Below the pieces are notes generated by a model. The model had not been told where the DNA came from. It saw only the letters and a program-made list of their open reading frames with translations, and made no database searches. From the IMG/VR virus record IMGVR_UViG_3300028862_000012, positions 62,001 to 126,000 of that record: DNA of 64,000 nucleotides; one strand, given 5' to 3'. Position numbers and translations under genes: made by a program. Below, one piece after another: positions 1,472 through 54,476 of the stretch; the stretch's first letter is position 1; every line of letters begins with the position of its first letter.

Positions 1472-1504
1472 ACAAAAGTTCCTTTTATAATTACATTATA
1501 ATAG

Positions 1505-3229
1505 TTAGTTAAATCGTCTACTTCTATCAACACGTAAGAAAGGAGTATTATCAAAACGCTTTCCAATATCCAGACTATCTAAGTTAATTCCCGGTGCGCG
1601 AATTAAAAATTGTAATGAAACATGCTGGTCTAAATCCTGCATTTCTATATAAGGAAAAGTAGCATTTAATAAAAGTTTATTAGTGGCATAAACATCTGTA
1701 TAAATATTTACTTCTTTTAATTTAACATTATCATCTATTTGATAGTCTATCCAAATATGTGTAGGAGTTGAAGAATATATATAGTCATTACGAGAGCTAA
1801 AAGAAGAGTTACAATTAGTTATAGTATAAATCGTTTCAAAATATAAAACTCCTGTACTATAGACTATAGTACTATTTGTTAAATAAGGAGATATAATATG
1901 TCCATTACTATCATCCGATGCAGTATAGGTAGTTCCATCTATATCAAAACTTAATTTTAACGTTCCTTCTTTAATAACAGTATAACCTGTTTCATAGGTT
2001 AAATGATCAGTTATTTCTCCAATAACAGGATTTTTAGAGGTATAATTAAATAAATTTAGAGTAAAATTTCCAGTAGTATATTCAATTGTTCCACTTAAAA
2101 ATAAGTTATCTTTATTATATAAGCTCCCTGTTCCATCATCAATAAAAGTAACTTTACTACCATCTGAAAAAGATAAAGTTCCGCTTACTTTTGACTCTAC
2201 AATATTTTTAGTATTTAACGTAGAGCTATATGTTGTTATTATTCCAATATTTTTAAATATCTTACTCCCAATACGAGATTTAAATAGTCCCAAAATCATT
2301 ATAAACTCTTCATAATATAAAATTTCTTCAATAGTTACTGCATACAAACCTAACTCTGTTTCTGTACCATCTTCATATTCAACTATTCCTGTTATCATCA
2401 AGTCTTCAAATATATTATCATAAAAATCATACGTTGCTATATTCATGCTTAAATCAGGAATAAAATTAGTTGTCCCATTTCTAAAATCTATAGGAAAAGT
2501 TAAATTACAACCATAATGAGGAATATCAGTAACCTTCTTACAATAATTTCCATTATTTTTTAAATAGTCTAAATACTTTTTTTGAAATAAATATTTAACT
2601 CCTCTTACCTCTTCATAATTAATTAAGTTATATTCTAGTGCTAAATGCTTTGTAAGTTTCTCTATACTTTTATCAAGATAGTAAACTTCATCTCCGTCTA
2701 CGCCGTATAAATCAGAATCCAGAGTTGGAGTTTTTTGTAATAGATTTACTGATGTAGTTTTATCAGGTATAAACCAATAAAAAGGAGTAGTAAAATCATA
2801 GTAGTTATCTATTTTTCTACAAATAGCATCTTTATCTAAAAGTCTTAATAATTTAGAACTAGCACTACTAAAATACATCAAATAAACATATCCAGTCATT
2901 TCCAATGATTTAAATATAAAATCGAATGAAGAATAAACAGTTTTATTTATTATTAACCAAGGAATAGCTCTAAAAACTTTTTTAACAAAATCTAAATCAT
3001 TACTAATACTTAAATCTATTGTATATCCTAACATGTCTTGAGCCAAAGCACATATTTCTTCAGATGTTAAAGTATCTATATTAAACATATCTTGCTTTAA
3101 AAATTTTTCTTCATGCTCTACCCATATTTCAGAACTTATAGCTTCAATAAATTGAGTCCAAAAACTATTTTTAATACTTGGATGTAATCGTTTAGTAAGA
3201 TTATTAGTAAGTAATTCTTCTGTCATCAT
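1505..3229 (-). CDS. Baseplate wedge protein (T4 gp7-like / tail protein I-like N-terminus)
   Basis: 574 aa, directly after the gp6-like gene. Contains two DD-G-x-G...G-x-I-x-Y-x-TG beta modules typical of myovirus baseplate proteins. Confidence 0.55.
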   Translation of the reverse strand: MMTEELLTNNLTKRLHPSIKNSFWTQFIEAISSEIWVEHEEKFLKQDMFNIDTLTSEEICALAQDMLGYTIDLSISNDLDFVKKVFRAIPWLIINKTVYSSFDFIFKSLEMTGYVYLMYFSSASSKLLRLLDKDAICRKIDNYYDFTTPFYWFIPDKTTSVNLLQKTPTLDSDLYGVDGDEVYYLDKSIEKLTKHLALEYNLINYEEVRGVKYLFQKKYLDYLKNNGNYCKKVTDIPHYGCNLTFPIDFRNGTTNFIPDLSMNIATYDFYDNIFEDLMITGIVEYEDGTETELGLYAVTIEEILYYEEFIMILGLFKSRIGSKIFKNIGIITTYSSTLNTKNIVESKVSGTLSFSDGSKVTFIDDGTGSLYNKDNLFLSGTIEYTTGNFTLNLFNYTSKNPVIGEITDHLTYETGYTVIKEGTLKLSFDIDGTTYTASDDSNGHIISPYLTNSTIVYSTGVLYFETIYTITNCNSSFSSRNDYIYSSTPTHIWIDYQIDDNVKLKEVNIYTDVYATNKLLLNATFPYIEMQDLDQHVSLQFLIRAPGINLDSLDIGKRFDNTPFLRVDRSRRFN

Positions 3230-3233
3230 TTAT

Positions 3234-4982
3234 TTAAACTCCTGTATAATACAAACAATTTACATCACTATCAAAATAATTTATTATTTGTGCCCTACTT
3301 GTAAGTATTATATTTTCAGTATCAGCCACATTAAACTCAAAATAAAGACTATACTCACCATAGGGCTTATTTAAACCTGAATTAACTTTAAATTGTCCTG
3401 TTCCTGCTGCTAAATCAACAGCACTACCAGTAGTATCATAGCCATTTAAGCCAGTTATACTTCCATTAGAATTTACTTTTGCAATTTGTTTATATGAAGC
3501 ATCATCTTTATGCTTTATTAAAACTTTACAGACTGAATAATTAATTGGAACCATTGTTACAGTAAAGCTTCCAATATAAGTACTATCAAAAACAAAAGAC
3601 TGTAGTATAAGCACTTGTATATCTGCATATCTAACTCCACTCAAATTATCTATTAATGAATAAACATCAGAGCCATACAGATTTTGTTTAAATTCAAAAT
3701 TATCAATAATATAAGTTTCCTTCAATGTTTCTATAATTAAAGAATTCATATAATTAAGTGTCTTGCTTTTATCACTTATATAAGCAGTTACATAAAACTT
3801 TAAATTTATTAATTTCAAGTCCATATAAGATAAAATATCTGTAGGAGGTTTTTTTTGATAAATATCTTCTACTAACTGTGTTTTTTGAGAGGTAGTTAAA
3901 TCAGTTCCAGAATCATTAGCGGCAGTTATATAAACACAATTTTCTTCACCTGAAATGAATGTCCAAGGATCACGATTATTATCTATGTTTGTTTCATAGC
4001 TTCCCCAAACATTTGCTTTTTTTATATAGCTAAAACTATTTATAATTGTTTTATAGTCCTCAGAAGTTCCAGCGCGTTTACCTGCTTGATAAAATTTTGG
4101 AGATAAATCTCTTAGTTTATCTATATCAATTTCATCAGTTCCCCCTGAAATTTCAGAAGTATTTGTTACATATAGATCTACTAATTCACTACTTACATTA
4201 TAAATATTACTATCTATAGTATCTATTAAATTTGTAGAATATAAATTACCATTTAAACCAAGTGTTTCTACATACTGAATATAAACAATATCACCTGCTA
4301 TTAATTGTTTTCCAAATATTCCATCGCCAAATTTTATTTTTATACCTGTCATGTCAGGTAAAGAATCTATATAAAAACAATAAGCATCACTACTTGCATC
4401 ATAAATTGAGTCAACTGGTTTGGCTTGTATATTATTTACATAAATAAACAGAACAGTATTTTCTATACTATTATTGTTTAAAGGAATAGTTTCAAATTTC
4501 GATCCAGAAGCAGTGTAAGTATAAGATTTATAAATTCCTTGCATAACACTTACATCACAAAATAAAGCAGAAGTTGTATATAAAGTATCTTCTATACATA
4601 TATATTTTGTATCTTTATAACTAAAAGTTGTAAATAAGGGAATTGGAATATTTTTAGTAGGATACTCATAAGGAGTAGCTATATTAAAATCTTTAGAAAT
4701 GGAAACTCTACAAGTTCCTTTAGCTCCTATTTTTCTAGGAATTGCATAGTTATGAAAATAACTTTGAGTTACCAAGCTACTCATGTTTCGTGCTAACTTC
4801 CATTTATTTTCACGAGTTAAATACTCATCATATAACATTTCATATGCAAGCTCTGTAGCAATATCTTCCAATAATAAAACATTAGTTCCATATGAAGTCA
4901 TGTCCATATGATCTGCTTTTGTTTTTAGTGTATTATATAATCTATTAAAAATAGCGGTATAGTTAAAACTTGCTGTGCTCAT
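3234..4982 (-). CDS. Baseplate wedge subunit, T4 gp6-like / baseplate J
   Basis: Motifs IKFGDGIFGK..GD.V.IQYVETLGLNGN and SGGTDEIDIDKLR...YQAGKRAGTSEDYKTII match the gp6/baseplate-J pattern. Confidence 0.85.
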   Translation of the reverse strand: MSTASFNYTAIFNRLYNTLKTKADHMDMTSYGTNVLLLEDIATELAYEMLYDEYLTRENKWKLARNMSSLVTQSYFHNYAIPRKIGAKGTCRVSISKDFNIATPYEYPTKNIPIPLFTTFSYKDTKYICIEDTLYTTSALFCDVSVMQGIYKSYTYTASGSKFETIPLNNNSIENTVLFIYVNNIQAKPVDSIYDASSDAYCFYIDSLPDMTGIKIKFGDGIFGKQLIAGDIVYIQYVETLGLNGNLYSTNLIDTIDSNIYNVSSELVDLYVTNTSEISGGTDEIDIDKLRDLSPKFYQAGKRAGTSEDYKTIINSFSYIKKANVWGSYETNIDNNRDPWTFISGEENCVYITAANDSGTDLTTSQKTQLVEDIYQKKPPTDILSYMDLKLINLKFYVTAYISDKSKTLNYMNSLIIETLKETYIIDNFEFKQNLYGSDVYSLIDNLSGVRYADIQVLILQSFVFDSTYIGSFTVTMVPINYSVCKVLIKHKDDASYKQIAKVNSNGSITGLNGYDTTGSAVDLAAGTGQFKVNSGLNKPYGEYSLYFEFNVADTENIILTSRAQIINYFDSDVNCLYYTGV

Positions 4983-4991
4983 ACTTTATTC

Positions 4992-5378
4992 CTATGATCC
5001 TAAATTATTTACAGAATCGTCATAATTAAAAATTGTTTTAAATAATGGTACATAACCTATTAATTTAATTTTCCATTTTCTATTAGCATAATCAGGAGTA
5101 ACACTTAAACTTACTGGTTCTATAGTAGGATAAAAATCATTTTTTAATCCATCCTGAATTGCTCTTTTAAAACTTATTGCATTATCATCTGATAGTTGCT
5201 TTCCTAAATATTGTAAGATAGTTCCACCAGAAGTACTTTTAATACGACTAAATTTTGGGCTTACAATCCATTTAGTGAATGATTGCTTTAGAGCTTCAGA
5301 ATCATATATTTTTTTTACTTGCCCTTGTGAATCTTTTTCACCATACATGTCCAAATCAAAAACAACGTGTTCTACCAT
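4992..5378 (-). CDS. Baseplate wedge protein, gp25/GPW-like
   Basis: 128 aa between the gp5-like and gp6-like genes. DSEALKQS..W...PK..R....GG pattern and a C-terminal beta hairpin fit the gp25 family. Confidence 0.6.
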   Translation of the reverse strand: MVEHVVFDLDMYGEKDSQGQVKKIYDSEALKQSFTKWIVSPKFSRIKSTSGGTILQYLGKQLSDDNAISFKRAIQDGLKNDFYPTIEPVSLSVTPDYANRKWKIKLIGYVPLFKTIFNYDDSVNNLGS

Positions 5379-5397
5379 AATACAATAGTTATGTTTT

Positions 5398-11500: not shown

Positions 11501-11641
11501 ACTTACCTACTTACTTACTCTAATAGTTAGTAAATTGATAATAGAAAAATTTATTTATTAAATATTAAAAGACAGATATACCATGAAGAAAACTTTGAGA
11601 TTGAATTTTTTTAAAAAAAAGATGTGCCAAAATTTATTTTA

Positions 11642-14779: not shown

Positions 14780-14833
14780 ACACCTATAGTTAGATTTACA
14801 GAATTTATCTAACTATCATAAAATGAGGATTAT

Positions 14834-16652: not shown

Positions 16653-16716
16653 AAAATAACTATCATAGTATGATTGTGTAACAATTAAAAACGATAATTA
16701 AAAGGGAAACGTAAAC

Positions 16717-18921: not shown

Positions 18922-18922
18922 A

Positions 18923-19630
18923 ATGCAAATTTTAACGGGAAAAATAGGTACTGGAAAGACAATTGGCTTAATTGAGTTAGCTCATAAGAATAATGGAATA
19001 CTGGTAGTGTGGAATAATGATCAAGGTCATCTAATGAAGGATAATTTAAAATGTTTATCCTCATACTATAATGATATTACTTTTGAAAATATTCCAGTTA
19101 TAACATATAATGAATTAATTAATAAAAAGCTAAGTGGTAAGAATAAAGATGATGCTAAATATTATATAGATCGCATTGAATTATTTTTAGAAATGTTTAA
19201 AGTTTCTGGTTTTAGTTGCGATGGCGAGAATGTAATTATCAGGGAAAAGACTTTTTCTGAACCTAATAATATTTATTCAAATCATCTGCTTATTAAAGCT
19301 AACTATTACATACAAGAGGTACCTATTATGATTGGCAAAATTATTGATTTCTGTAAAAGTAAGATTGTTGTAGAGATTAGCATTATTGTATTTGCTATTG
19401 TTTCTTCAATTTTAATTATTGGTGGTGTTTCAGAAGGACAGCTTGCAGGTGTAGTCGAAGCAGTAATTGGTGTTATTGGCGCGATTGCTACTCTCATCAA
19501 GCTTATTGGATCTTTGACAGTAAAAGACGTAGCTGATAGTATTAATAGTGCTACAAAGACTGTAGCTACTGATGCTAAAGAAGCGGTAGATACCGTTGCC
19601 TCTGCTGTTGCCTCTGCTGTAAAGAAGTAA
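18923..19630 (+). CDS. Small P-loop protein reading in frame into a downstream membrane protein
   Basis: GGAGG SD and ATG at 18923. Walker A GKIGTGKT. No stop before the in-frame ATG at 19328. Confidence 0.6.
   Translation: MQILTGKIGTGKTIGLIELAHKNNGILVVWNNDQGHLMKDNLKCLSSYYNDITFENIPVITYNELINKKLSGKNKDDAKYYIDRIELFLEMFKVSGFSCDGENVIIREKTFSEPNNIYSNHLLIKANYYIQEVPIMIGKIIDFCKSKIVVEISIIVFAIVSSILIIGGVSEGQLAGVVEAVIGVIGAIATLIKLIGSLTVKDVADSINSATKTVATDAKEAVDTVASAVASAVKK
19328..19630 (+). CDS. Two-TM membrane protein, holin-like, with its own start
   Basis: TAACTATTA at 19300-19308, then a GAGG SD, then ATG 19328. Two hydrophobic helices, an Ala/Val/Thr-rich amphipathic tail and a KK end. Confidence 0.55.
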   Translation: MIGKIIDFCKSKIVVEISIIVFAIVSSILIIGGVSEGQLAGVVEAVIGVIGAIATLIKLIGSLTVKDVADSINSATKTVATDAKEAVDTVASAVASAVKK

Positions 19631-26528: not shown

Positions 26529-26543
26529 ACTAACTATTATAGT

Positions 26544-27956: not shown

Positions 27957-27975
27957 TTAAAAAATAATAGTTATT

Positions 27976-28011: not shown

Positions 28012-28051
28012 ATAACTATTATATAAGATTATATTAAAGGAATATCTTTTT

Positions 28052-29716: not shown

Positions 29717-29738
29717 AATAGATTAAAACTTTTATATA

Positions 29739-29764
29739 ATCCTGCCAGAAATGGCGGGATTTTT
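29739..29764 (+). terminator. Intrinsic terminator
   Basis: ATCCTGCCA-GAAA-TGGCGGGAT-TTTT. Confidence 0.8.
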
Positions 29765-29809
29765 CATTTATAACTATTAGAATATCTAAATATTAAAAGG
29801 AAACTATTT

Positions 29810-30031: not shown

Positions 30032-30076
30032 AGTAAAAAGTATTTACAATATAACTATTACTTTATAGGAATTACT

Positions 30077-34214: not shown

Positions 34215-34253
34215 TTTATTAAAATTTAACTAACTATTATATTAAGTATAACT

Positions 34254-35972
34254 ATGTATATAAAAGGCATATCAATGAGACAGAAATTAGTTGAAAAATT
34301 TAATAGAGACTGGAAAGAAACTAAATTAAAGCCTGTTTTTTTTCCTCTCACTGAATCTACTAAATTAGTAGAGGGAATAAACGGAGATAAATATAATTGT
34401 TTAAGTTGTTATCTTATTCCTATATGGAAGCTTGATGAAGAAAATCTAAATGGAAGGAAATATTCCCGATCTTTAGCGGAAAAAATTGTTAAAGAAAATA
34501 AAGTTACTGTATCATTAGATAGTCATCCAGAAGACGATAATTATGTTCCAGTAATTGCAGATGTTATAGCAATCGGAAAAGATCCTGTTATTAAAGATGG
34601 AATACTTTGGGCTTATGCTTATTTTGTATCAGAGGAAGTTGATAAGAAAGTCCATAGAATGCTTGATTTAGGGTTTCCTTTACAACAGTCTTCTTCTGGC
34701 CTAGGTGAAGTAGATTATAATAATGTAGTTATAACAGAAACTTATGACCTTGAACGATATTTTGACTTTTTGGTTCAGGATAGTAGCTATCAAGTTTATA
34801 CTACAAAAGAGAATGAAATAATAACAGATAAACCTCAGAAAATGGAAAGTACAGATATAAAAGAAAGTATAAAAGAAAGTATAGAGGAAAAAATTATTGA
34901 ACCGGTTCTTGAAAAATTAGAGGAATCTAAAAAAGAATATTTAAAAGAAAATGTAACTATTAGTAATATAGGTAAATCTATAAATATAAAGGAAAAAACT
35001 ATGGCAGAAAATAAAAGTTTAAGACTTAATGTAAAGAGTCTTATACGTGAGGCAAAGGCTAAAGAGGATCTTTCTGAAAAAAATATCTTGTTAAAAGAAG
35101 CTTTTGGTGCAATTAAGAACGAGTCTGGCTTTGAGGATATGAAGAAAGATATTGTTTTACTGTTAAAGGAAACAGATTTAAGTATTTCTAATCTTGCAAA
35201 GAAAGGTAAAACTGTTGACTCTGTTACTTCAAAGTACAATGAGTCTGCTAAGGAAGCAGTGGCTTTAAAAGCAGAACGTGAAATTTTTGTTGGTAAGATT
35301 CAAGAGTCTGCTAATAAGCTTAAACAGGTTTCTGCTACTGCTAAAGATCTTGCTAAAAAGTTTAAGGAAGCATCTACTAAGTTTAAAGAAAACTCTGACA
35401 AGAATAAAGATGCTTTTAATAAGTTAAAAGAGTCTGCTATAGCTAATGCTAAACTTATAGAGTCTAATGCTAAACTTGTAGAAAAATCTATTATAGCATT
35501 AGACCTTATTAAAGAGCGCTACAATACTTTAGAATTCCGTAATGAAGCACTTGCTCGTAAGGTAGAACAGCTTATTAATGAAAATAATAAGAAAGATCGT
35601 GAGATTCGTCGAATGTCTCGTCAGAATGAAGCACAGGAACCTCGTAGTCGTTCAGTTAGAGAATCAGTAAATGAAGATTCTTATAATACTGAAATGCCTG
35701 ATGAATATAAGCAGACTGAAGAAGTAACTCGCTATTATGAAGATACTGTTCGTCGAAAACCCTATTTAGCTCGTTTCAAAGAAAAGATATTGAATAGTAA
35801 AACTGTACAAGATGCAATGTATCGGGTTTTGCAGATTGACGGTGATGATTTTGATGAAAAAGCTGGGAAACATAATTCCATTAACGAGAGCATTGAAAAG
35901 ATCGATGATGGAAGAGAAGTAAAACAGTCAATGGGTTCAAGTCTCTTAGGAAAGCGCCCCGGCTGGAACTAA
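34254..35972 (+). CDS. Prohead protease (gp21-like) fused to a coiled-coil scaffold (gp22-like)
   Basis: ENLNGRKYS, LDSHP (catalytic His) and QSSSGLGEV (catalytic Ser region), followed by a long K/E coiled coil. Confidence 0.8.
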   Translation: MYIKGISMRQKLVEKFNRDWKETKLKPVFFPLTESTKLVEGINGDKYNCLSCYLIPIWKLDEENLNGRKYSRSLAEKIVKENKVTVSLDSHPEDDNYVPVIADVIAIGKDPVIKDGILWAYAYFVSEEVDKKVHRMLDLGFPLQQSSSGLGEVDYNNVVITETYDLERYFDFLVQDSSYQVYTTKENEIITDKPQKMESTDIKESIKESIEEKIIEPVLEKLEESKKEYLKENVTISNIGKSINIKEKTMAENKSLRLNVKSLIREAKAKEDLSEKNILLKEAFGAIKNESGFEDMKKDIVLLLKETDLSISNLAKKGKTVDSVTSKYNESAKEAVALKAEREIFVGKIQESANKLKQVSATAKDLAKKFKEASTKFKENSDKNKDAFNKLKESAIANAKLIESNAKLVEKSIIALDLIKERYNTLEFRNEALARKVEQLINENNKKDREIRRMSRQNEAQEPRSRSVRESVNEDSYNTEMPDEYKQTEEVTRYYEDTVRRKPYLARFKEKILNSKTVQDAMYRVLQIDGDDFDEKAGKHNSINESIEKIDDGREVKQSMGSSLLGKRPGWN

Positions 35973-36619: not shown

Positions 36620-36818
36620 GTAATCGGATGTTAGTAAAAATGTAAAACAATATTTTATATTTTTACTAACTATTATAATGAAAGAAAAAAGTATTTATTA
36701 AAAATGATTAATACTAATTTAATTGAAAATGATTAAATAAACTATTGCTGTATATGGCTATAAAAAACCTTTCAAAAAATATTTTAATTAAATTCTTTAA
36801 AAAGAAGAGGAAGTTTTT

Positions 36819-38420: not shown

Positions 38421-40184
38421 ATGATAGATTACAATCAAGTTGTAAATGTTAGTTTACATTCAATTTTAAATAAAAGAGTTTATTATGAAAAACAAGGATT
38501 TAATGTAGACAACTTAAAACTCAAAGTAAATGAATTAACATGCAGAACTTATACAAATAAAGATTATTCTAATGTATCTATTGAAATGCCTTTATGTAAA
38601 GTATTTCCATCAGCAAGTTCACAAATTAAAGTAAAAGTAGTATGTGATTATTGCCACACTGAATATGAAACTATGTATATGATAGTATTATCTCGTTCTG
38701 GTAAAAATTGTTGTAAAAATTGTATTCACGCTAAGTCTGCTGAAAGCTTAAAGAAAGAATTTGGTGTAACAAATGTGTCTCAATTAGACTCTATAAAGTT
38801 AAAGAAAAAAGAATTAAGCTTACAGAAGTTTGGAACAATAACCCCATTACAAAATAAAGAGATTAAAGAAAAAATAGTTAAAACAAACATAGAAAAATAT
38901 GGTGTTAAATATGCATCTATGCTAAAAGAAAAAGTAGATTATACTAAAGAAGCATGGAAAAATAAAACAGAAGAGGAACTATCTGACATAAGGTATAGAC
39001 GAGACAAAACTTGGTTATTAAATAGAGGATTTTTAGAAGAGACTTTAGCTCAGGCTGAAAAAGATAAAGTTTCCTTTACTGAAATTAAAAGAAACTTTAA
39101 TAGAAAAGTTAGTTATTCTACTTTAAGTAATTTTGCTATATCTCAAAACTTTTCTATACTCACTTCATTTGAAGAGTTTAAATCTTTTATTTATGAAAAA
39201 GGTAAGACAATCAGATTTAAGTGTAATACTTGTGATACTGAATTTTTTCAGTATATGAATTATGGATTTGTATCAGATGATAGTAGAATTGAATGTCCTA
39301 AATGTCCTTCTGCTATTGGAAGTCGCGAAGAAAATGAAGTTCTTGATTATATTAAATCTATTTATTTTAATGAAATTATTCATAGCTATAAATTAATTAA
39401 TAGAAAAGAAATAGATATAGTTATTCCAGAATTCAATTTAGGAATAGAATATAATGGATCATATTGGCATAATGATAAGTTTCGCGGAAAATATTATCAT
39501 ATAGAAAAATACAATTCAGCTAAAGAAGAAAAAATAGACCTTATTTTTATTAATGATTTTGAATGGAAGTATAAGCAGGATATAGTTAAATCAATTATAA
39601 AGAATAGATTAAAGATAGTCGATAAACGACTATATGCTCGTAAGGGAATTATTAGCTTAGTTGATTCATCTACTGCTAAAGAATTTTTCTATGTTAATCA
39701 TATTCAGGGTAGTAAAAGTATAAACTCTAAAATGATTTCTATTGGATTATACATAGATTCTGAACTTGTTTCTTTAGTAAGTTTTAATAAAACAAAGTAT
39801 AGAAAAGATTATGAATATGATTTAGTACGTTATGCAAATAAATTAGGCTATCAAGTTATAGGCGGGTTTAGTAAAATACTTTCGTTTTTTGAAAAAGCTT
39901 ATAAACCATCAAGTATAGTAACCTTTTCTGAAATACGGTTGTTTAAGTCCTCTGTTTATGAAAAAGCAGGGTTTACTTTAGACCATATTACCAGACCAAA
40001 TTACTTTTATACAAAAAATAATATATTTGCTGGTTCTCGTCAAAACTTTCAAAAAAGTAAGTTAAAGAAATTATTTGATGATTATACTGACTCTAAAACA
40101 GAAAGTGAAATGATGGCAGAACATAATTACGATAAAATTTGGGATTGCGGAGTACGAGTTTTTGTAAAAAAGTATCAAAAGTAA
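38421..40184 (+). CDS. Hef-like homing endonuclease (Zn domain, repeats, PD-(D/E)xK nuclease, C-terminal GNAT-like domain)
   Basis: GSREENEV...EIDIVIPEFNLGIEYNGSYWH, NHIQG, IGGFSKIL..F and YEKAGF...PNY form the Hef-like pattern of T4-like phages. Confidence 0.75.
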   Translation: MIDYNQVVNVSLHSILNKRVYYEKQGFNVDNLKLKVNELTCRTYTNKDYSNVSIEMPLCKVFPSASSQIKVKVVCDYCHTEYETMYMIVLSRSGKNCCKNCIHAKSAESLKKEFGVTNVSQLDSIKLKKKELSLQKFGTITPLQNKEIKEKIVKTNIEKYGVKYASMLKEKVDYTKEAWKNKTEEELSDIRYRRDKTWLLNRGFLEETLAQAEKDKVSFTEIKRNFNRKVSYSTLSNFAISQNFSILTSFEEFKSFIYEKGKTIRFKCNTCDTEFFQYMNYGFVSDDSRIECPKCPSAIGSREENEVLDYIKSIYFNEIIHSYKLINRKEIDIVIPEFNLGIEYNGSYWHNDKFRGKYYHIEKYNSAKEEKIDLIFINDFEWKYKQDIVKSIIKNRLKIVDKRLYARKGIISLVDSSTAKEFFYVNHIQGSKSINSKMISIGLYIDSELVSLVSFNKTKYRKDYEYDLVRYANKLGYQVIGGFSKILSFFEKAYKPSSIVTFSEIRLFKSSVYEKAGFTLDHITRPNYFYTKNNIFAGSRQNFQKSKLKKLFDDYTDSKTESEMMAEHNYDKIWDCGVRVFVKKYQK

Positions 40185-40206
40185 CTATTATATAAAGAGG
40201 AATAGT

Positions 40207-40387: not shown

Positions 40388-40454
40388 AAAATAATTCTGT
40401 AAATATATAACTATTATAATAGAAGTTAACTAACTTTATAAGGATATAATAATT

Positions 40455-42094: not shown

Positions 42095-42844
42095 ATGCCA
42101 ACAATTATTCCTTATGGAGCTCTAAGTTTATATGATGTTATTCAGTTTACCTATAGAAGTGAAGTAGTTCGTAGTAGATTTTATAATATGGATAGAGATG
42201 TAATTCGTACACGAGTAATAATAAAAAAAATAAATAAATTATCAGTAGATCATTTAAATCAGCCAACAGTTAAATATGAAATATTTAGTTCAAGTTATCC
42301 TCAGTATAAACCATATAATTTGCATAAATTAAGGGAAGCTAAAAGAAAAGTTACAGAGGTTCATAAACAAAGAAAATATAAGCATACTTATAGTTTTGTG
42401 TTAGAATTAGAAGAATTAAAAATAAGCAGTTTCTATAGAACACGTACAGGAAGTCAGTTAAAATGGGTAGATCGGCCCCCTCAACGGGATATAAAAACTA
42501 TTTATAAAGATACCCGAGAAAAAATAATAAAACGGCATACTGATAGAAAGACTAAAAAAATAGATAAAGCAGAAGTAAAAAAAGATATTGAAATATTAAA
42601 AAAACACGCAAAGTATTTAGATGTTGGTGATTGGAATTCACAAGTAAAAGGAATTATGGGCGATTTCTATTATAGGGAAGCTCCTTTACTAAGAAAATAT
42701 GGAATGCTATATGGGAAATGTTGGTATACTGATTTACCTACTGGTATAAATTTACCTTTTATGAATAAACATGAATTATCAATTATATTTTATTTATTAA
42801 AAACTAAAAAAATAGAGAATGACAGTAAAGTAACTATTAGATAA
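42095..42844 (+). CDS. Basic hypothetical protein
   Basis: 249 aa, K/R-rich. Possibly nucleic-acid binding. Confidence 0.55.
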   Translation: MPTIIPYGALSLYDVIQFTYRSEVVRSRFYNMDRDVIRTRVIIKKINKLSVDHLNQPTVKYEIFSSSYPQYKPYNLHKLREAKRKVTEVHKQRKYKHTYSFVLELEELKISSFYRTRTGSQLKWVDRPPQRDIKTIYKDTREKIIKRHTDRKTKKIDKAEVKKDIEILKKHAKYLDVGDWNSQVKGIMGDFYYREAPLLRKYGMLYGKCWYTDLPTGINLPFMNKHELSIIFYLLKTKKIENDSKVTIR

Positions 42845-42856: not shown

Positions 42857-43141
42857 ATGGATGATAATATAGAATTGGATAGCATAGTTGATGATGTTGA
42901 AGCAGATATTTTTGATACAGAAGTAGTGCGGTTTGAATTAACTGATGATGTTTATATTGAAAGTGTTTTAGATTCTGATGAGTGGAATAGTTATTGTATT
43001 ACCGATGCGGGTGAGGAAATAGAAAAAAACTTTAATACAAATATTGATGAACCTATATATATTGGAAATAATATAACTATTAGTAAGGAAGATATGATAA
43101 AGTTTAATGATATTAAACAAGATTTTATTAAGGAATTATAA
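42857..43141 (+). CDS. Acidic hypothetical protein
   Basis: 94 aa, preceded by TAACTATTA (42831-42839). Confidence 0.55.
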   Translation: MDDNIELDSIVDDVEADIFDTEVVRFELTDDVYIESVLDSDEWNSYCITDAGEEIEKNFNTNIDEPIYIGNNITISKEDMIKFNDIKQDFIKEL

Positions 43142-44866: not shown

Positions 44867-44924
44867 TATTTTATTTTTATTGTAACTATTAGTATATAGA
44901 TATAATCTATAAAGGAAATTTTTT

Positions 44925-46523: not shown

Positions 46524-46556
46524 TAATAGCCTTGCTAGTCTGATAACTATTAGTAT

Positions 46557-47126: not shown

Positions 47127-47221
47127 TATTACTAATTGATTAAACTCCTTAATTCTGTTACTATATTAACAGAATTATCTAACTATTATAATCCCACTAA
47201 ATTGGGAAAGGAAAATTAATT

Positions 47222-47437: not shown

Positions 47438-47901
47438 ATTATATTCCTGAACAGGTAATATTAGGATTATTAGAAGTACCTAATGAAATTAGTTTGATTA
47501 TTCCTATTACTGGATGTAGTCTGCATTGTAATGGTTGTCATAGTCCTGAAATGCAAAATGAAAAAAATGGTGAAGAGCTTACTGAAGAAAAATTTATATC
47601 CTTATTATTTAATTATAAAAATAAAGCCTCTTGTATATGCTTTTTTAGTGGTGAGTTTAAAATATCTCATTTAATTACTAGAGCAAAGAATGAAGGATTT
47701 AAAACCGCTCTTTATTCAGGATTTACTAATATAAAGGATATTCCTTTTAATATATTACAAAATATAGATTATTTAAAATTAGGTGAATATAATGAATTAA
47801 AGGGTGGTCTTCAAGAAAAGACTACCAATCAAAGAATATACAAAATAGACAATGGCAACTATGAAGATATAACACAATTATTTTGGAGAAATAAATTATG
47901 A
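47434..47901 (+). CDS. nrdG: Anaerobic ribonucleotide reductase activating protein (radical SAM)
   Basis: GCSLHCNGCHS (CxxxCxxC), DYLKLGEY and TNQRIY. Adjacent to nrdD. Confidence 0.92.
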   Translation: MNYIPEQVILGLLEVPNEISLIIPITGCSLHCNGCHSPEMQNEKNGEELTEEKFISLLFNYKNKASCICFFSGEFKISHLITRAKNEGFKTALYSGFTNIKDIPFNILQNIDYLKLGEYNELKGGLQEKTTNQRIYKIDNGNYEDITQLFWRNKL

Positions 47902-50165: not shown

Positions 50166-50197
50166 AAGGACTAGCCTTAATTGGTTAGTCCTTTTTT
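50166..50197 (+). terminator. Intrinsic terminator
   Basis: AAGGACTAGCC-loop-GGTTAGTCCTTTTTT. Confidence 0.85.
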
Positions 50198-50230
50198 ATT
50201 TTCTAACTATTATAATGTGAGGAAATAAAA

Positions 50231-51144: not shown

Positions 51145-52014
51145 TTGAAGTATGCAAAAACAAATCTTTCAGATTCAGAAAGAATATCAAATTCTAATTA
51201 TTACAAACAAGATACCAATGTAAGAAACTATCGAAATATTATTTATTACATAGAAATAGAGCTAGAGAAGTATTTAGCAAAGCTTTTAACAAAAAATCAA
51301 TTAGATAGAATTATCTGGTCAAGTTCTGATTTTGCATTGCGTAAGCGTGGAGGTAATGCACAAGAGGATGTAACAAATACTTTGGATCTTCCTTTTGTTA
51401 GCTACAAATTAACAGATGTAAATACAGATACACAGCGTCAATTATTTAACAACTATATGAATGTTAATGGCGTTTACTTATCAGATGCAGAAGTAATGGT
51501 AAAGACTGCACCAATGCATTTAGAGTATGAAGTAGTATTTTGGTGTAATCGAGATGAAGAGCTTGTGTATGCTACTCATAATTTTTTATTTGATATGAGT
51601 AATGAAACTTTAATTCATCCAAGTATTCCTTTAGAAACAGGTAAAAGTATAGTACTTCCTGCCTTTATTTCTTTTTCTGGAAGTTATAATGATGTATATA
51701 GTCAGTCTGATTATATAATTAGCAACAAAATTCGCACATTGTCTATGACTTTCTCTATAGATACTTATATTTTAAAAGAAGTAGGAAATACTTTAAATTC
51801 TGAAGGAATAGGCTCATTTGGTAGCATTAATATTCCATTAGTTAAAACAGTTATATTTGATTTTTTTAATAGTAAAAATATTAATACAGAAGCAATAAAA
51901 AATGGAGATATAAATATATATGATTCAGAAATGGAAATACTTTTGCGAGATTATTTTTCTGATGATGAAGAAATATTTCAAGAATTAAAGCCACCTGTAG
52001 TTGCTCCTACTTAA
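51145..52014 (+). CDS. Tail terminator / sheath stabiliser (gp15-like)
   Basis: LPFVSYKLTD...TAPMHLEYEVVFW...TLSMTFSIDTYI. Directly upstream of the sheath gene. Confidence 0.65.
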   Translation: MKYAKTNLSDSERISNSNYYKQDTNVRNYRNIIYYIEIELEKYLAKLLTKNQLDRIIWSSSDFALRKRGGNAQEDVTNTLDLPFVSYKLTDVNTDTQRQLFNNYMNVNGVYLSDAEVMVKTAPMHLEYEVVFWCNRDEELVYATHNFLFDMSNETLIHPSIPLETGKSIVLPAFISFSGSYNDVYSQSDYIISNKIRTLSMTFSIDTYILKEVGNTLNSEGIGSFGSINIPLVKTVIFDFFNSKNINTEAIKNGDINIYDSEMEILLRDYFSDDEEIFQELKPPVVAPT

Positions 52015-52089
52015 TAATATCTTATAAAAAAAGTAACTATTATAATACGAAGATATAAAATTTTTGATTAAGTTATAGGATGGAAAATA

Positions 52090-53907
52090 ATGGATAATTG
52101 GAGAATTCAAACTTTTTTTGAGGATAAATCAACAGTTGTAAAACCGACTACTTCTGCATTGGGTTTTACTGTTATAAAAGCCCCAAAGGGTACAGACTAT
52201 ATGTATTTTGATGTAGGACAAGCAGGATCAATTATTGATTGCTGTGGTTATCCTGCTTACAGTAACGGTGTTCAGGATGCAATAGACTATAATAAAAAAG
52301 CTCCATTATATGTAAATGCACCTTCTACTAATGGAAAATTTGGTGGTGTATTTGTAACAAAGACAGGTACTATCCCTTTTTATTCAGGTTATAGTAGTTG
52401 GGATACTTTTGATTTAAAGCTTATTCCTCAAAGCATGAATGCAGGTACAGGTGATGCTTCTAAAGTATTGTTTAATGTTACTTTAACTAATTTTGCTAAG
52501 TACAATGCAAGAAGTTTAACAATTTCTATAAACGGAACTCCTGATACTTTAGTATTTGATACTTCTGTTGCAGGAATTGAAACTATTACTGGTAGTCTTT
52601 GCACTGCTGTATTAACTAAATCAACGGGTGCTTTAGCAATTACATTTACTACTGCTCCTGCAATACTTGCTGTAGTGACTGTTGATTATACAATAAATAT
52701 TAATGATGATTGTTATTTTGTTTTAAGAAATTATAGTAAGTGTGTAGATGATATTGCTGTAAAAGTTTTAGGAAAGACTAATGGATTATTTAGTATTGCT
52801 GTTTATAAGAAAGATAAAAATAATGATTTTTCTGAAATAACAAACTCTCCTTTTGAAGTTTCCTTAAATCCTAAAGGAACAAATGCTAACGGTAAAAATA
52901 TCTATGTAGAGAATGTTTTCAAAGAAAGTAAATATCTTAAAGCACTTGATACTGAAACTGCATTTAGTACTTTTGCAGATGATACTGCTTTAGTAAATCT
53001 TGCTGGTGGTTCTCGTGGAGATACGGTAACAAATGCGGTAATTGCATCTTCTTATCTAGCTCTTACTGATAAAAATAAATATCCTGTTAAAGTTTTCTTT
53101 GATGGAAATGCAGACGCTACAATTGCTACGGCTTTTGAAACGCTACGCAATGGTATATTTAATCGTTCTCGTTTTATACTGACTACTCCTGATAGTACAG
53201 AAACTGAATTGATTTCAGGTGCGGCAACTTCGCGTTATAATTTAAGTAATCGTGGTATTTATGTTTATTGTTTAACTTGGGGAACACATGTAGATAGTTA
53301 TTATGGCAATGATTTTAATTGTTCAAATGTTGGTTTAATTGCAGGTCGTCATGCAGATAGTATAAATAAAAAACATGGTGGTATTGGCCCTATGTGGTAC
53401 GATGAAAATGAAGTTGGTGGACAACTAGGCTCTGCAATTACTAGCTTAAATCAAAGTGTTACTGAAATTAATTCTAAAGCATTAGATACACTAAGACTTA
53501 ATCCTGTTAAATGGGATATATCTGCTGGAGCGATGATAGTATCAGACAGAACAACCTTAATTACTGATGGTGACTACAGTTATATTGGCCCTTCTGGTTT
53601 AGCTGACTATATAGCTTTTAATATAGAAAAATTAGTATTACCTAACCAGCTTGGAAAGCTGAATGATATGTTCCATCGTAATAGTGTTAAGGCAAACGCA
53701 GAAACAATATTAAAAACTGTTTCTGATTTACTGTATGACTATTATGTAAAGTGTGATGAGGAAAATAATAATAGTGAAATACTTAATGCTAAAAAGTTTG
53801 TATTAACTGTAGGTGTTCAGTATACTCCACAATCTGAAATGATAGATTTTATATTTATCAATAGTTCAATTGGTGTTGATATAAAAGAAGTAGTTAACAA
53901 AGGATAA
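52090..53907 (+). CDS. Tail sheath protein (gp18-like)
   Basis: 605 aa. C-terminal LRLNPV...GAMIVSDRT, LGKLND...R and YVKCDEENNNSEI...FVLTVGVQYT. Confidence 0.9.
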   Translation: MDNWRIQTFFEDKSTVVKPTTSALGFTVIKAPKGTDYMYFDVGQAGSIIDCCGYPAYSNGVQDAIDYNKKAPLYVNAPSTNGKFGGVFVTKTGTIPFYSGYSSWDTFDLKLIPQSMNAGTGDASKVLFNVTLTNFAKYNARSLTISINGTPDTLVFDTSVAGIETITGSLCTAVLTKSTGALAITFTTAPAILAVVTVDYTININDDCYFVLRNYSKCVDDIAVKVLGKTNGLFSIAVYKKDKNNDFSEITNSPFEVSLNPKGTNANGKNIYVENVFKESKYLKALDTETAFSTFADDTALVNLAGGSRGDTVTNAVIASSYLALTDKNKYPVKVFFDGNADATIATAFETLRNGIFNRSRFILTTPDSTETELISGAATSRYNLSNRGIYVYCLTWGTHVDSYYGNDFNCSNVGLIAGRHADSINKKHGGIGPMWYDENEVGGQLGSAITSLNQSVTEINSKALDTLRLNPVKWDISAGAMIVSDRTTLITDGDYSYIGPSGLADYIAFNIEKLVLPNQLGKLNDMFHRNSVKANAETILKTVSDLLYDYYVKCDEENNNSEILNAKKFVLTVGVQYTPQSEMIDFIFINSSIGVDIKEVVNKG

Positions 53908-53913
53908 TAGAGT

Positions 53914-54429
53914 ATGAGTTTAGAATTAGAGAGTTTGCTTTTAACAGGTGAGGATGCATTAAGTAATCATTTTATGGTTACTATCCCTGCCTTTCTTGGT
54001 GCCAATGAATCAATTTTAAGTTTAAACTTACGAGTACTTACTATATCAAATGTAGGCCGTGAGTTATCTACTTATGAAATAACTAAACGAGGTCGTAAGT
54101 CTACTCGTCCCGGTGGAATTGATGATACTGCAAAGGAATTTACTTTTACTTTTAGACCTGATAAAAAATTACGTACTTACAATAGTTTAATAGCATGGAC
54201 TAATGTAATTAAGCATGAACAATTAGGAACAATGGTAGTCGATCCTTTATATCGCGTTATTATTACTGTAACTCCTGTGGATACTGCAAATATTCCTTTA
54301 GGTGGCCCTACTTATTATGAAGGATGTTGGCCTAGTTCTATAGATGGAATAGAATATGATGAAGAAAACGGTGATCCTTTAAACGTTAGTGTCACTATGC
54401 AATACACTAATCGTATTGCTCCTGTTTAA
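53914..54429 (+). CDS. Tail tube protein (gp19-like)
   Basis: 171 aa after the sheath. FTFTFRPD...W...YEGCWPSSIDGIEYD...VSVTMQY. Confidence 0.85.
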   Translation: MSLELESLLLTGEDALSNHFMVTIPAFLGANESILSLNLRVLTISNVGRELSTYEITKRGRKSTRPGGIDDTAKEFTFTFRPDKKLRTYNSLIAWTNVIKHEQLGTMVVDPLYRVIITVTPVDTANIPLGGPTYYEGCWPSSIDGIEYDEENGDPLNVSVTMQYTNRIAPV

Positions 54430-54476
54430 GTTAATAGTTATTTTTTAAGCCTGTTTTAAAAAGTAACTATTATAAT

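What the first reader, a model, noticed from the sequence alone, without database searches (positions are those of the whole stretch)
1499..54472. Phage-specific TAACTATTA element marking a late-type regulon
Seen: about 20 copies, nearly all in short intergenic gaps on the coding strand. They lie 4-60 nt upstream of portal, protease, sheath, tube-cap, neck, spanin-like, lysin, SSB, glutaredoxin/nrd and Dps genes, and about 140 nt upstream of MCP, often just after a terminator and without a -35 box. A rough estimate at about 28% GC gives roughly 5 exact copies by chance over both strands, scattered mostly inside genes. Known: T4 late promoters are a -10-only TATAAATA read by gp55. Inference: this is the analogous late promoter with a different sequence, and it defines which hypothetical genes are late or virion genes.
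Basis: partly seen in the sequence, partly recalled or inferred. Interest (0 to 1): 0.65.

Follow-up and report, generated by a model that had tools for sequence, protein, structure and literature searches.

The report
Phage-specific minus-10-only promoter, TAACTATTA
A nine-base word repeated about 50 times in an uncultured 224-kb peat phage is very probably that phage's own promoter, which starts messages right at the ribosome site or the start codon, and a previously unnamed sigma-like protein encoded nearby is the likely reader.

Summary
TAACTATTA occurs 23 times in the window against 4.1 expected. It occurs 55 times in the whole 223,865-bp phage record. Of these, 44 lie in the 9% of the genome that is intergenic (2.6 expected from composition-matched shuffles), and 42 of the 44 point at the next gene. 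An unbiased k-mer scan of upstream regions ranks it first.

The core TAACTAT is the top upstream word in independent relatives with only about 35% sheath identity. It sits at five orthologous places in a 71%-MCP relative while the flanks diverge.

Three kinds of geometry place the start site 5 nt after the 9-mer: an ATG exactly 6 nt after TAACTAT, Shine-Dalgarno cores piling up from that same offset, and a tRNA starting 8 nt after the 9-mer. The box therefore spans -13 to -5, with AACTAT where a -10 hexamer sits. There is no -35 element.

The anatomy is T4-late-like, but the sequence differs and no gp55, gp45 or phage RNA polymerase was found. A 262-aa zinc-ribbon protein 8 kb left of the window folds like sigma domain 2; its best matches include T4 gp55. 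It is the candidate reader.

"Late" timing is untested. The regulon also includes homing endonucleases, TnpB, tRNAs and the nrd operon.

The parts
1499..1507 (-). TAACTATTA, 27 nt before ATG 1471 (332-aa gene 473-1471, tail/baseplate block)
5383..5391 (-). variant TAACTATTG, ATG 4 nt after it (leaderless 128-aa gene 4992-5378)
11521..11529 (-). TAACTATTA, 20 nt before ATG 11500 (137-aa gene, then the 786-aa gene)
14784..14792 (-). variant TAACTATAG, ATG 4 nt after it (leaderless 146-aa gene 14339-14779). Left half of a back-to-back pair in the 54-bp divergent gap.
14810..14818 (+). variant TAACTATCA, 15 nt before ATG 14834. Right half of the divergent pair.
16657..16665 (+). variant TAACTATCA, 51 nt before ATG 16717
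19300..19308 (+). TAACTATTA inside ORF 18884-19630, followed by AGAGG and an in-frame ATG at 19328. This is an internal promoter for a nested 100-aa membrane protein.
26531..26539 (+). TAACTATTA before the 454/470-aa gene (ATG 26592 with SD, or GTG 26544)
27965..27973 (-). Antisense copy just after stop 27956. It is the 5' arm of a 27-bp hairpin with the copy at 28013.
28013..28021 (+). TAACTATTA right after a bidirectional terminator, 30 nt before ATG 28052
29771..29779 (+). TAACTATTA after terminator 29738-29761, 30 nt before ATG 29810 (73-aa zinc-ribbon protein)
30052..30060 (+). TAACTATTA 16 nt before ATG 30077 (632-aa gene). Conserved before the orthologue in L031.
34231..34239 (+). TAACTATTA before the 565/572-aa gene. 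Conserved in L031.
34954..34962 (+). Internal TAACTATTA, then SD and an in-frame ATG at 35001 (nested 323-aa product). Conserved in L031.
36667..36675 (+). TAACTATTA 143 nt before the MCP-position gene 36819-38315. It is the longest conserved block of that spacer against L031.
40182..40190 (+). TAACTATTA overlapping the stop of the homing endonuclease gene, 16 nt before a 34-aa ORF. Conserved position in L031.
40408..40416 (+). TAACTATTA 38 nt before ATG 40455 (135-aa DNA-binding family protein)
42831..42839 (+). TAACTATTA in the last codons of the upstream gene, 17 nt before ATG 42857
43074..43082 (+). TAACTATTA inside the 94-aa gene, 58 nt before ATG 43141
44883..44891 (+). TAACTATTA 33 nt before ATG 44925 (312-aa gene)
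46544..46552 (+). TAACTATTA with ATG 4 nt after it (leaderless 189-aa gene 46557-47126)
47180..47188 (+). TAACTATTA 33 nt before the glutaredoxin-NrdG-NrdD operon (47222-50126)
50204..50212 (+). TAACTATTA after terminator 50166-50193, 18 nt before ATG 50231
52034..52042 (+). TAACTATTA 47 nt before the tail sheath gene 52090-53907
54432..54440 (-). Antisense copy just after stop 54429. It is the 5' arm of an 18-bp hairpin with the copy at 54464.
54464..54472 (+). TAACTATTA with ATG 4 nt after it (leaderless tail tube gene 54477-55100)
60440..60448 (+). Copy deep inside ORF 60210-60908 with no start after it. Probably one of the chance copies.

Best explanation
What it is. TAACTATTA is the core of a phage-specific promoter that has no -35 element. 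The clade-wide core is TAACTAT.

Geometry. The box occupies -13 to -5, so AACTAT sits where a bacterial -10 hexamer sits, with A at -11 and T at -7. The next four bases are AT-rich. Transcription starts at a purine 5 nt after the 9-mer.

Consequence. Messages begin directly at the Shine-Dalgarno sequence or at the AUG (leaderless), or 4 nt before a tRNA.

Extent. About 50 such promoters head short transcription units. These cover the head, tail and baseplate genes, and also tRNAs, the nrd operon, homing endonucleases and a TnpB.

How it is read (inferred). Host RNA polymerase core carrying a phage-encoded sigma reads the box through a sigma domain 2. The candidate is the 262-aa zinc-ribbon protein at genome 53297-54085, about 7.9-8.7 kb left of the window. 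Its gene has a sigma70-like promoter and a TAACTATTA in tandem.

Shown: enrichment, orientation, conservation, geometry, and the fold of the candidate.
Inferred: that RNA starts there, who reads it, and when.

My odds: DNA-level promoter about 0.8; read by this sigma-like protein about 0.45; expressed after the sigma70-type class about 0.55.
For: Enrichment.
- 23 copies against 4.1 expected in the window.
- 44 intergenic against 2.6 expected on composition-matched shuffles; none in excess in coding DNA.
- 42 of 44 co-oriented with the next gene.
- First in an unbiased 8-mer scan of -100..0 regions, p about 1e-19. The second class found is AGTAATTGACA-N17-TATAAT.
- The 9-mer is nearly invariant: one-mismatch variants show almost no intergenic excess.
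- No -35 information; T/G-A-W-T and then a purine follow the box (41 of 44).

Conservation.
- TTAACTAT is the top upstream word in G003, G004, L032, L033 and L034, which share 34-39% sheath identity and come from other metagenomes, with near-total strand bias.
- It is present in L044 and L045.
- Five orthologous copies are kept in L031 (MCP 71% identical) while the flanks diverge.

Start-site geometry.
- ATG lies exactly 6 nt after TAACTAT in 15 of 174 sites in this genome and 18 of 71 in relatives. Other offsets give at most 8 (this genome) or 6 (relatives).
- 26 of these open ORFs of 50 aa or more, the tail tube gene among them.
- Shine-Dalgarno cores never begin less than 4 nt after TAACTAT and pile up at 5-8 nt.
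- tRNA-Gly begins 8 nt after the 9-mer.
- Internal calibration: sigma70-type promoters of the same phage show TATAAT-N6-ATG. Relative G005 shows TGgTATAAT-N6-SD/ATG. The last T of TAACTAT therefore aligns with -7.

Promoter need.
- Copies follow terminators.
- Copies are the only signals in divergent gaps: genome 186511-/186521+ and window 14784-/14810+.

Reader.
- No multisubunit or T7-type polymerase was found.
- The AF2 model of the 262-aa protein has pLDDT 92.4.
- In an all-against-48,161-chain structure search, the three matches with Z of 8 or more are all sigma factors: ShbA Z 9.7; SigC Pribnow-box region Z 8.8 at 2.7 A over 88 residues; T4 gp55 Z 8.2 at 2.8 A over 93 residues.
- Foldseek's top rows are also sigma region 2, and the ESM Atlas gives the same lead.
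- Homologues of this protein (23-48% identical) sit on contigs that carry TAACTAT before genes: L113, L114 and L117.

T4 comparison. The T4 late promoter is described as an 8-bp box from -13, with an AT-rich melted segment, no -35, about 50 sites and either polarity (PMC2988020).
Against: - No RNA 5' end has been seen. The only sequencing runs holding this DNA are metagenomic DNA.
- The sigma assignment rests on a predicted fold with middling scores: Z 8-10 for a helical domain, Foldseek E 0.04-2.
- No sequence profile calls the protein a sigma. It has no Sigma70_r2 or r4 match, no gp55 PHROG match and no PDB sequence match beyond the zinc ribbon.
- Relative G005 has a homologue of the same protein (E 7e-73 to the family profile) but uses TGgTATAAT, not TAACTAT. 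Either specificity has drifted in the family, or this protein is not the specificity determinant.
- The regulon includes nucleotide-metabolism genes and tRNAs, which fits 'middle/continuous' as well as 'late'.
- Two copies face backwards into genes (27965-, 54432-).
Confidence: 0.72

Rival explanations
1. RNA-level element. The word is transcribed and acts in the mRNA, either as a translational enhancer or Shine-Dalgarno substitute, or as an endonuclease processing site that creates 5' ends at the Shine-Dalgarno sequence or the AUG.
For: - The motif lies at a fixed short distance before Shine-Dalgarno sequences or ATGs.
- In the ATG+4 class it occupies -13 to -5 of the start codon, where a Shine-Dalgarno sequence normally lies.
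- The relatives' TTAACTATA matches 8 of 9 bases of the T7 gene-10 'epsilon' enhancer TTAACTTTA (my own knowledge, Olins and Rangwala 1989; not tested here).
Against: - It needs two different spacing rules, motif-N6-ATG and motif-N6-SD. A start site explains both with one rule.
- Copies precede a tRNA by 8 nt and head the tRNA cluster.
- The MCP copy is 143 nt from the start codon and is conserved there.
- Copies follow terminators and are the only signals in divergent gaps, where a promoter is needed anyway.
- The same N6 geometry holds after bona fide -10 hexamers in this phage and in G005.
Confidence: 0.1
2. Register B. The real -10 is the TATAAT-like hexamer formed by the last two bases of the 9-mer plus the next four (TA-taat). 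It is read by host primary sigma. TAACTAT is then an upstream extension, like an extended -10, contacted by a phage factor. The start would lie about 11 nt after the 9-mer.
For: - TA-T/G-A-W-T after TAACTAT resembles TAnAAT; T at the last position occurs in 33 of 44 copies.
- Relatives read TAACTAT-ATAAAT-A, which contains the T4 word TATAAATA.
- G005 uses a true extended -10.
Against: - A start about 11 nt downstream would fall inside the 26 ORFs that begin 4 nt after the 9-mer, inside tRNA-Gly, and after the many Shine-Dalgarno cores that begin 3-6 nt after the 9-mer.
- Information content of those four bases is about 0.5 bit each, against 1.5-2.8 bits for the 9-mer.
- In G005 the hexamer itself, not a word upstream of it, sits N6 before the Shine-Dalgarno sequence or ATG.
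Confidence: 0.07
3. The promoter belongs to a phage-encoded RNA polymerase rather than a sigma factor, as with AR9 or phiKZ non-virion polymerases or a T7-like enzyme.
For: - AR9 late promoters are AACA-N6-T-A/G with the last base as +1, lack a -35, number about 118, and include internal and antisense ones (PMC5312081).
- Here the pattern is AACT-N7-T-R(+1), off by one base.
- This is a jumbo phage with an extremely invariant box.
Against: - No match to RNA_pol (T7 type), Rpb2_6 or Rpb1_2 in six frames. The T7-type model did not ring in any control genome, so that null is weak.
- No D-[FYWLIVM]-D-[GA]-D catalytic motif in any ORF of 150 aa or more.
- Ten of the largest unassigned proteins are polymerase A, helicase, ligase, SbcC, fibre, terminase and the like.
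- The phage carries about 25 good sigma70-type promoters, which phiKZ-like phages do not use.
Confidence: 0.06
4. A DNA site for something other than transcription initiation: an operator for a repressor or activator, a methylation or restriction-avoidance word, a homing or packaging site, or a host alternative-sigma promoter borrowed by the phage.
For: - Four inverted pairs exist: 27965/28013, 54432/54464, genome 53205/53269 and genome 186511/186521.
- Homing endonuclease and TnpB genes lie next to copies.
Against: - Most copies are single and strictly directional.
- The word is not a palindrome.
- Positions track gene starts at nucleotide precision.
- It is conserved across phages from many samples whose hosts are unknown and probably differ.
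Confidence: 0.04

Closest known systems
Phage T4 late promoters (TATAAATA) read by gp55 with gp33 and the gp45 clamp
   Same: - A short, tightly kept box starting at -13.
- An AT-rich segment down to the start.
- No -35 element.
- About 50 sites per genome, of either polarity, some tandem with earlier promoters, and driving homing endonuclease genes too (PMC2988020).
- Aligned at -13..-6, the relatives' TAACTATA shares T-13, A-12, A-8, T-7 and A-6 with TATAAATA.
- gp55 is the third-best structural match of the candidate sigma.
   Different: - The central triplet differs (ACT against TAA).
- No gp55 or gp45 homologue is found by profile.
- The candidate sigma is 262 aa with an N-terminal zinc ribbon and an extra C-terminal helical domain.
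- Many transcripts are leaderless.
- Coupling to replication is unknown.
Group-4 (ECF) sigma factors and their -10 recognition by domain sigma-2
   Same: - Residues 37-140 of the candidate superpose on sigma-2 of SigC, ShbA, SigW, sigmaE, BldN and CnrH (Z 7.3-9.7).
- The motif keeps the A at -11 and the T at -7.
   Different: - ECF promoters need a -35 read by sigma-4; here nothing is conserved at -35.
- No Pfam sigma model matches any of 77 family members.
AR9 / phiKZ non-virion RNA polymerase late promoters
   Same: A -35-less short consensus AAC(A/T)-N6/7-T-R(+1), with internal and antisense copies and tandem early-plus-late arrangements (PMC5312081).
   Different: - Spacing is off by one base.
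- No polymerase genes were found.
- The early class here is sigma70-like.
Leaderless expression from a -10 placed next to the ORF (Deinococcus-Thermus; Thermus phage middle/late genes)
   Same: A -10 element exactly N6 before the ATG, in both promoter classes of this phage. The pattern is described for Deinococcus-Thermus in the abstract of PMC12340547.
   Different: Here most genes still have strong Shine-Dalgarno sequences, and the box is not TATAAT. That phiYS40 late mRNAs are leaderless is my recollection and was not checked.

Membership tests
T4-type late transcription system | Short box at about -13 to -6, no -35 element, AT-rich segment to the start site | tested here: met
   Logo of 44 sites. 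Register from the N6-ATG, N6-SD and tRNA geometry. The start site itself is inferred, not mapped.
T4-type late transcription system | Consensus TATAAATA | tested here: not met
   The consensus is TAACTATTA here and TTAACTAT(A/T) in relatives.
T4-type late transcription system | gp55 homologue | tested here: inconclusive
   phrog_234 and phrog_12791 find nothing in six frames. BLASTP of the candidate against gp55 gives E 0.64. The fold matches gp55 at Z 8.2, 2.8 A over 93 residues.
T4-type late transcription system | gp45-type sliding clamp as activator | tested here: not met
   phrog_223 finds nothing in the genome. A clamp-loader-like protein exists (DNA_pol3_delta2).
T4-type late transcription system | Late timing and dependence on replication | not testable with these tools
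   No RNA run holds this phage.
Sigma-70 family (for the 262-aa candidate) | Sequence match to region 2 / region 4 models | tested here: not met
   PF04542 and PF04545 give no hit, and PF08281 gives no hit in this protein, in the six-frame searches. In a Pfam scan of 77 family members, none of the 25 families shown (of 31) is a sigma model; the hits shown are mostly zinc-ribbon families.
Sigma-70 family (for the 262-aa candidate) | Sigma-2 fold | tested here: met
   Model pLDDT 92.4. The only three chains with Z of 8 or more, out of 48,161, are sigma factors, and 8 of the top 10 are sigma factors. Foldseek's top rows are sigma region 2, probability up to 0.99. Scores are middling for a helical domain.
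Sigma-70 family (for the 262-aa candidate) | Binds core polymerase and directs initiation at TAACTAT | not testable with these tools
   Needs biochemistry. The only indirect support is co-occurrence of homologues and motif on L113, L114 and L117. G005 is a counter-example.
AR9/phiKZ nvRNAP late promoters | AACA-N6-T-R(+1) and split beta/beta' genes | tested here: not met
   The spacing is N7. No Rpb1 or Rpb2 match and no DxDGD motif.

The most novel reading that the evidence does not exclude
A so far unnamed family of zinc-ribbon sigma factors acts as the late or middle sigma of a clade of uncultured low-GC jumbo myoviruses. The family has about 120 clusters at 50% identity and always sits in a cassette with a Mor-like 140-aa protein and a 155-aa protein. 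It would read a -10-only TAACTAT box and launch messages that start at the Shine-Dalgarno sequence or the AUG itself. Specificity would have shifted to TGgTATAAT in one branch.
Probability: 0.4. Interest if true: 0.7.

Novelty: new variant of a known kind. Interest (0 to 1): 0.6.

Why it matters
1. It gives a ready operon map for a phage in which most genes have no recognisable relatives. About 50 units are marked, including nested in-frame genes and leaderless genes.

2. The start site can be read from sequence alone, because the same N6 rule holds for two promoter classes and across relatives.

3. It points to a testable new sigma family and its promoter. Such a pair could be tested as an orthogonal sigma and promoter, and it gives a handle on how -10 specificity evolves (TAACTAT against GTATAAT within one protein family).

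4. It shows mobile genes (homing endonucleases, TnpB) adopting the phage's private promoter.

Tried and rejected
RNA evidence.
- The one sequencing-run search found only two DNA metagenomes, peat and freshwater sediment.

Close cultured relatives.
- None by megablast or tblastn.

Literature.
- A search for the word itself gave only primers and unrelated hits.

Sigma, polymerase and clamp searches in six frames.
- Sigma70_r2 and r4, T7 RNAP, Rpb2_6, Rpb1_2, the two gp55 PHROGs and the gp45 PHROG all came back empty.
- The only hit was a 13.5-bit r4_2 match in a 558-aa open frame (about 553-aa protein).

Family scans.
- Pfam overviews of about 280 proteins and PHROG scans of 53 of this phage's proteins found no transcription factor. 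The A2 list was cut at 25 of 37 families.
- PDB sequence searches of the MCP-position protein, the 632-aa protein and the 572-aa protein gave nothing. 'Portal' and 'protease' stay unverified.

Candidate sigma.
- The word-index homologue search found only one relative. The exhaustive search was needed.

Z-genome idea.
- The adenylosuccinate synthetase hit a PHROG family (phrog_1211) whose description reads '2-aminooxy adenylosuccinate synthetase', which suggests a PurZ-type enzyme, but its nearest solved relatives are ordinary PurA. I dropped the idea.

Host.
- Relatives are binned in both a Woesearchaeota and a Patescibacteria MAG. I read this as binning by composition, not as host evidence.

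Not run: complex prediction, because no binding claim is made.

Full report
**Setting**

The window is bases 62001-126000 of a 223,865-bp IMG/VR virus record. The record has 29% G+C and CheckV estimates it 91% complete. No cultured phage is close. The only sequencing runs that hold the DNA are a peat metagenome and, in small part, a freshwater sediment metagenome. No RNA run holds it, so every statement about transcripts below is inference from sequence.

**The observation**

- TAACTATTA occurs 23 times in the window against 4.10 +/- 2.11 in dinucleotide shuffles.
- It occurs 55 times in the whole record.
- With a simple gene call (370 genes, 91% coding), 44 of the 55 lie in intergenic DNA.
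- Shuffling only that intergenic DNA gives 2.63 +/- 1.63. Coding DNA holds 11 copies against 12.5 expected.
- 42 of the 44 intergenic copies point towards the next gene.
- A blind 8-mer enrichment scan of all -100..0 regions puts TAACTATT first (40 upstream regions, p about 1e-19). AATTGACA ties TAAGGAGA for next place; the Shine-Dalgarno words follow.
- One-mismatch versions of the 9-mer show almost no intergenic excess, so the word is nearly invariant.
- A few variants that keep TAACTAT do sit in promoter-like places. In the window these are at 5383-, 14784-, 14810+ and 16657+.

**Two promoter classes**

The second enriched word belongs to a conventional class, (AG)TAATTGACA-N17-TATAAT. There are about 25 intergenic examples spread over the genome. 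In the window they precede the two homing endonuclease genes (31979 and 38371) and the sites at 15504, 45922 and 55104.

The TAACTATTA class has no information anywhere from -40 to -5 relative to the word. It is followed by T/G, A, A/T, T and then a purine in 41 of 44 copies. Some genes carry both classes in tandem, at genome 17318/17261, 53230/53269 and 196595/196547.

**Conservation**

- A 9.3-kb contig whose MCP-position protein is 71% identical (L031) keeps TAACTATTAT at five orthologous places. These are before the 622-aa and 593-aa genes, inside the 593-aa gene, about 147 nt before the MCP-position gene, and after the homing endonuclease gene. The surrounding spacers have diverged. In the MCP spacer the block CTAACTATTATA is the longest conserved run.
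- Contigs from other metagenomes share only 34-39% sheath identity (G003, G004, L032, L033, L034, L035, and L044/L045 from MAG bins). They again give TTAACTAT as the top upstream 7- or 8-mer, almost always on the coding strand: 11/1, 12/0, 6/0 and 9/0. Some of these contigs overlap each other, so they are not all independent.
- More distant sheath relatives lack it (G002, G005, L036-L043).

**Where the RNA should start**

Four independent patterns agree.

1. ATG lies exactly 6 nt after TAACTAT (4 nt after the 9-mer) in 15 of 174 sites in this genome and 18 of 71 in relatives. No other offset from 0 to 30 exceeds 8 in this genome or 6 in the relatives. 26 of these ATGs open ORFs of at least 50 aa with no Shine-Dalgarno sequence. 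In the window these are the tail tube gene (54477) and the genes at 46557, 14779 and 5378.
2. Where a Shine-Dalgarno sequence exists, its core never begins less than 4 nt after TAACTAT. It piles up at 5-8 nt in 21 of 58 cases.
3. tRNA-Gly begins 8 nt after the copy at genome 31176.
4. The same spacing follows true -10 hexamers. TATAAT-N6-ATG occurs at four sigma70-type promoters of this phage. TGgTATAAT-N6-SD or -ATG occurs in relative G005.

The last T of TAACTAT therefore corresponds to -7. The word spans -13 to -5, AACTAT stands in the place of the -10 hexamer with A at -11 and T at -7, and +1 is the purine 5 nt after the 9-mer.

The alternative register takes TA-taat as the -10, with a start about 11 nt downstream. 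That would put starts inside those ORFs, inside the tRNA and beyond many Shine-Dalgarno sequences, so I reject it.

**Need for a promoter at these places**

- Copies at 28013, 29771 and 50204 directly follow terminator hairpins.
- The 54-bp divergent gap at 14780-14833 holds only two back-to-back TAACTAT variants, one for each direction.
- The 66-bp divergent gap at genome 186507-186572 holds only two exact copies 1 bp apart. One heads a leaderless 156-aa gene and the other a gene with a weak terminase match.

**What is driven**

In the window, 17 copies fall between 26.5 and 54.5 kb, one per 1.6 kb. This block holds the MCP-position gene, sheath and tube. It also holds the glutaredoxin-NrdG-NrdD operon and a DNA-binding family protein.

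Elsewhere in the genome the word precedes:
- GIY-YIG and HNH homing endonuclease genes
- a TnpB transposase
- tRNAs
- a methyltransferase
- a gene with a weak large-terminase match

Two copies inside ORFs (19300 and 34954) are each followed by a Shine-Dalgarno sequence and an in-frame ATG. They would give nested C-terminal products of 100 aa and 323 aa. The second is conserved in L031.

The word therefore marks transcription units, not virion genes as such. Nothing here shows timing.

**Who reads it**

- No T7-type polymerase, beta or beta' domain was found, and no D-x-D-G-D motif in any ORF of 150 aa or more. The T7-type model rang in no control genome, so that particular null is weak.
- No Sigma70 region 2 or 4, no gp55 family and no gp45 family was found by profile.
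- I picked the 262-aa gene at genome 53297-54085 because it carries both promoter classes.
- The ESM Atlas put it near a viral cluster with Sigma70_r2 (score 0.92), and its structure rows were mostly sigma factors.
- The exhaustive sequence search found 120 cluster representatives, mostly 255-285 aa.
- With 77 of them aligned, AlphaFold2 gave pLDDT 92.4. The model has a CxxC...CxxC zinc ribbon, then helices 38-139, a loop, and helices 162-260.
- Aligned to 48,161 PDB representatives, only three chains reach Z of 8 or more, and all three are sigma factors. They are S. coelicolor ShbA (Z 9.7), the M. tuberculosis SigC Pribnow-box recognition region (Z 8.8, 2.7 A, 88 residues) and chain F of 7D7D (Z 8.2, 2.8 A, 93 residues). 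Chain F is T4 gp55.
- Pro-sigmaK, SigW, sigmaB, sigmaE region 2, BldN and CnrH follow. Foldseek's list is likewise dominated by sigma region 2, though with weak E-values.
- Sequence profiles see only the zinc ribbon.

The gene always lies in a cassette followed by a gene of about 140 aa and, wherever the contig extends far enough, a gene of about 155 aa. The first of these resembles Mor-family activators in Atlas models (TM 0.52-0.58). That is a lead only.

Contigs carrying homologues at 23-48% identity also carry TAACTAT before genes, with the N6 rule (L113, L114, L117).

Against a simple one-to-one link: G005 has a strong homologue (E 7e-73 to the family profile), but its upstream word is TGgTATAAT.

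**Comparison with known systems**

The T4 review describes the T4 late promoter as follows (PMC2988020):
- an 8-bp box beginning at -13
- an AT-rich melted segment
- no -35
- 50 sites, 32 of them perfect
- either polarity
- read by the minimal sigma gp55 with gp33 and the gp45 clamp

The anatomy here is the same. The sequence, the sigma (if it is one) and the absence of a gp45-type clamp differ.

AR9 late promoters, AACA-N6-T-A/G(+1), look similar on paper (PMC5312081). The spacing differs by one base, and no polymerase genes are present here.

I file the element as a new variant of a known kind.

**Unexplained**

The reverse copies at 27965 and 54432 pair with the forward copies at 28013 and 54464. 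They form 27-bp and 18-bp perfect stems (-30.9 and -14.3 kcal/mol, z -11 and -6). They may be antisense promoters, as known in T4 and AR9, or stem extensions of terminators. Relatives do not show them.

Noticed in passing
genome 53297-54085 (+), i.e. L003:17297-18082; about 7.9-8.7 kb left of the window start: A 262-aa zinc-ribbon protein whose residues 37-140 fold like sigma domain 2 (best matches ShbA, SigC and T4 gp55). The family has about 120 clusters and no Pfam or PHROG name. It is the candidate reader of the motif.
   Followed up: yes
L003:18082-18513 and L003:18519-18995 (genome 54082-54995): A 144-aa and a 159-aa gene follow the sigma-like gene; the ~140-aa gene does so in every relative looked at, and the ~155-aa gene wherever the contig reaches that far. 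The 144-aa protein resembles Mor-family transcription activators in ESM Atlas models (TM 0.52-0.58).
   Followed up: partly
window 15504, 31979, 38371, 45922, 55104; about 25 sites genome-wide: A second promoter class, (AG)TAATTGACA-N17-TATAAT, of host sigma70 type. Several have ATG exactly 6 nt after the -10 (genome 39701-, 127070+, 170472+, 207577-), so leaderless messages occur in both classes.
   Followed up: partly
window 27965-28021 and 54432-54472: A reverse and a forward motif copy form perfect 27-bp and 18-bp hairpins around a terminator or spacer (z -11 and -6). They could be antisense promoters or stem extensions.
   Followed up: partly
window 34954-35001 and 19300-19328: Motif copies inside ORFs, each followed by a Shine-Dalgarno sequence and an in-frame ATG. 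These are nested genes (323-aa and 100-aa products). The first is conserved in L031 and recalls protease/scaffold nesting.
   Followed up: partly
window 32013-34214 and 38421-40184: Two large homing-endonuclease-like genes sit inside the head gene block, each with its own sigma70-type promoter. The first is absent at the same place in relative L031.
   Followed up: partly
genome about 51890-53262 (L003): An IS605-type TnpB gene (51908-53080, minus strand) is flanked by an inverted repeat of about 33 nt containing TTGACAC..GGTCAA. It carries its own TAACTATTA (53205-). It appears inserted between the 160-aa gene and the sigma-like gene, which are adjacent in relatives.
   Followed up: partly
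window about 36752-36760 and L031 about 4700: The block CTGTATATG is conserved within the 143-nt leader of the MCP-position gene, about 55 nt before the start codon. Its role is unknown.
   Followed up: no
L002:10682-16269 (genome 28.7-34.3 kb, minus strand): A cluster of 10 tRNA genes. One call (L002 15931-16001) has a four-base 'aatt' anticodon loop reading and no assigned amino acid. TAACTATTA and sigma70-type promoters head the cluster.
   Followed up: no
L002:6863-9247 (minus strand): An adenylosuccinate synthetase gene is split by an intein with a LAGLIDADG domain. It matches phrog_1211 ('2-aminooxy adenylosuccinate synthetase'), which suggests a PurZ-type enzyme, but the nearest solved proteins are ordinary PurA. 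I make no claim of a Z-base genome.
   Followed up: partly
G005 (IMGVR_UViG_3300011005_000049, 133 kb, 41.5% G+C): This distant relative uses gtgGTATAAT-ATAAAT followed by a Shine-Dalgarno sequence or ATG at the same N6 spacing (11 intergenic copies). It still encodes a homologue of the zinc-ribbon sigma-like protein.
   Followed up: partly
L044-L046 (genome contigs): Relatives of this phage that carry the motif are binned in a 'Candidatus Woesearchaeota' MAG and a 'Patescibacteria' MAG. This is probably binning by low G+C. The host remains unknown.
   Followed up: no
region 124-180 kb of the genome (alignment A2): The Pfam overview lists an ART-PolyVal ADP-ribosyltransferase, PNKP/RNA ligase, NAPRTase and a second TnpB. 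An ADP-ribosyltransferase could modify host polymerase as T4 Alt/Mod do. It was not located or studied.
   Followed up: no
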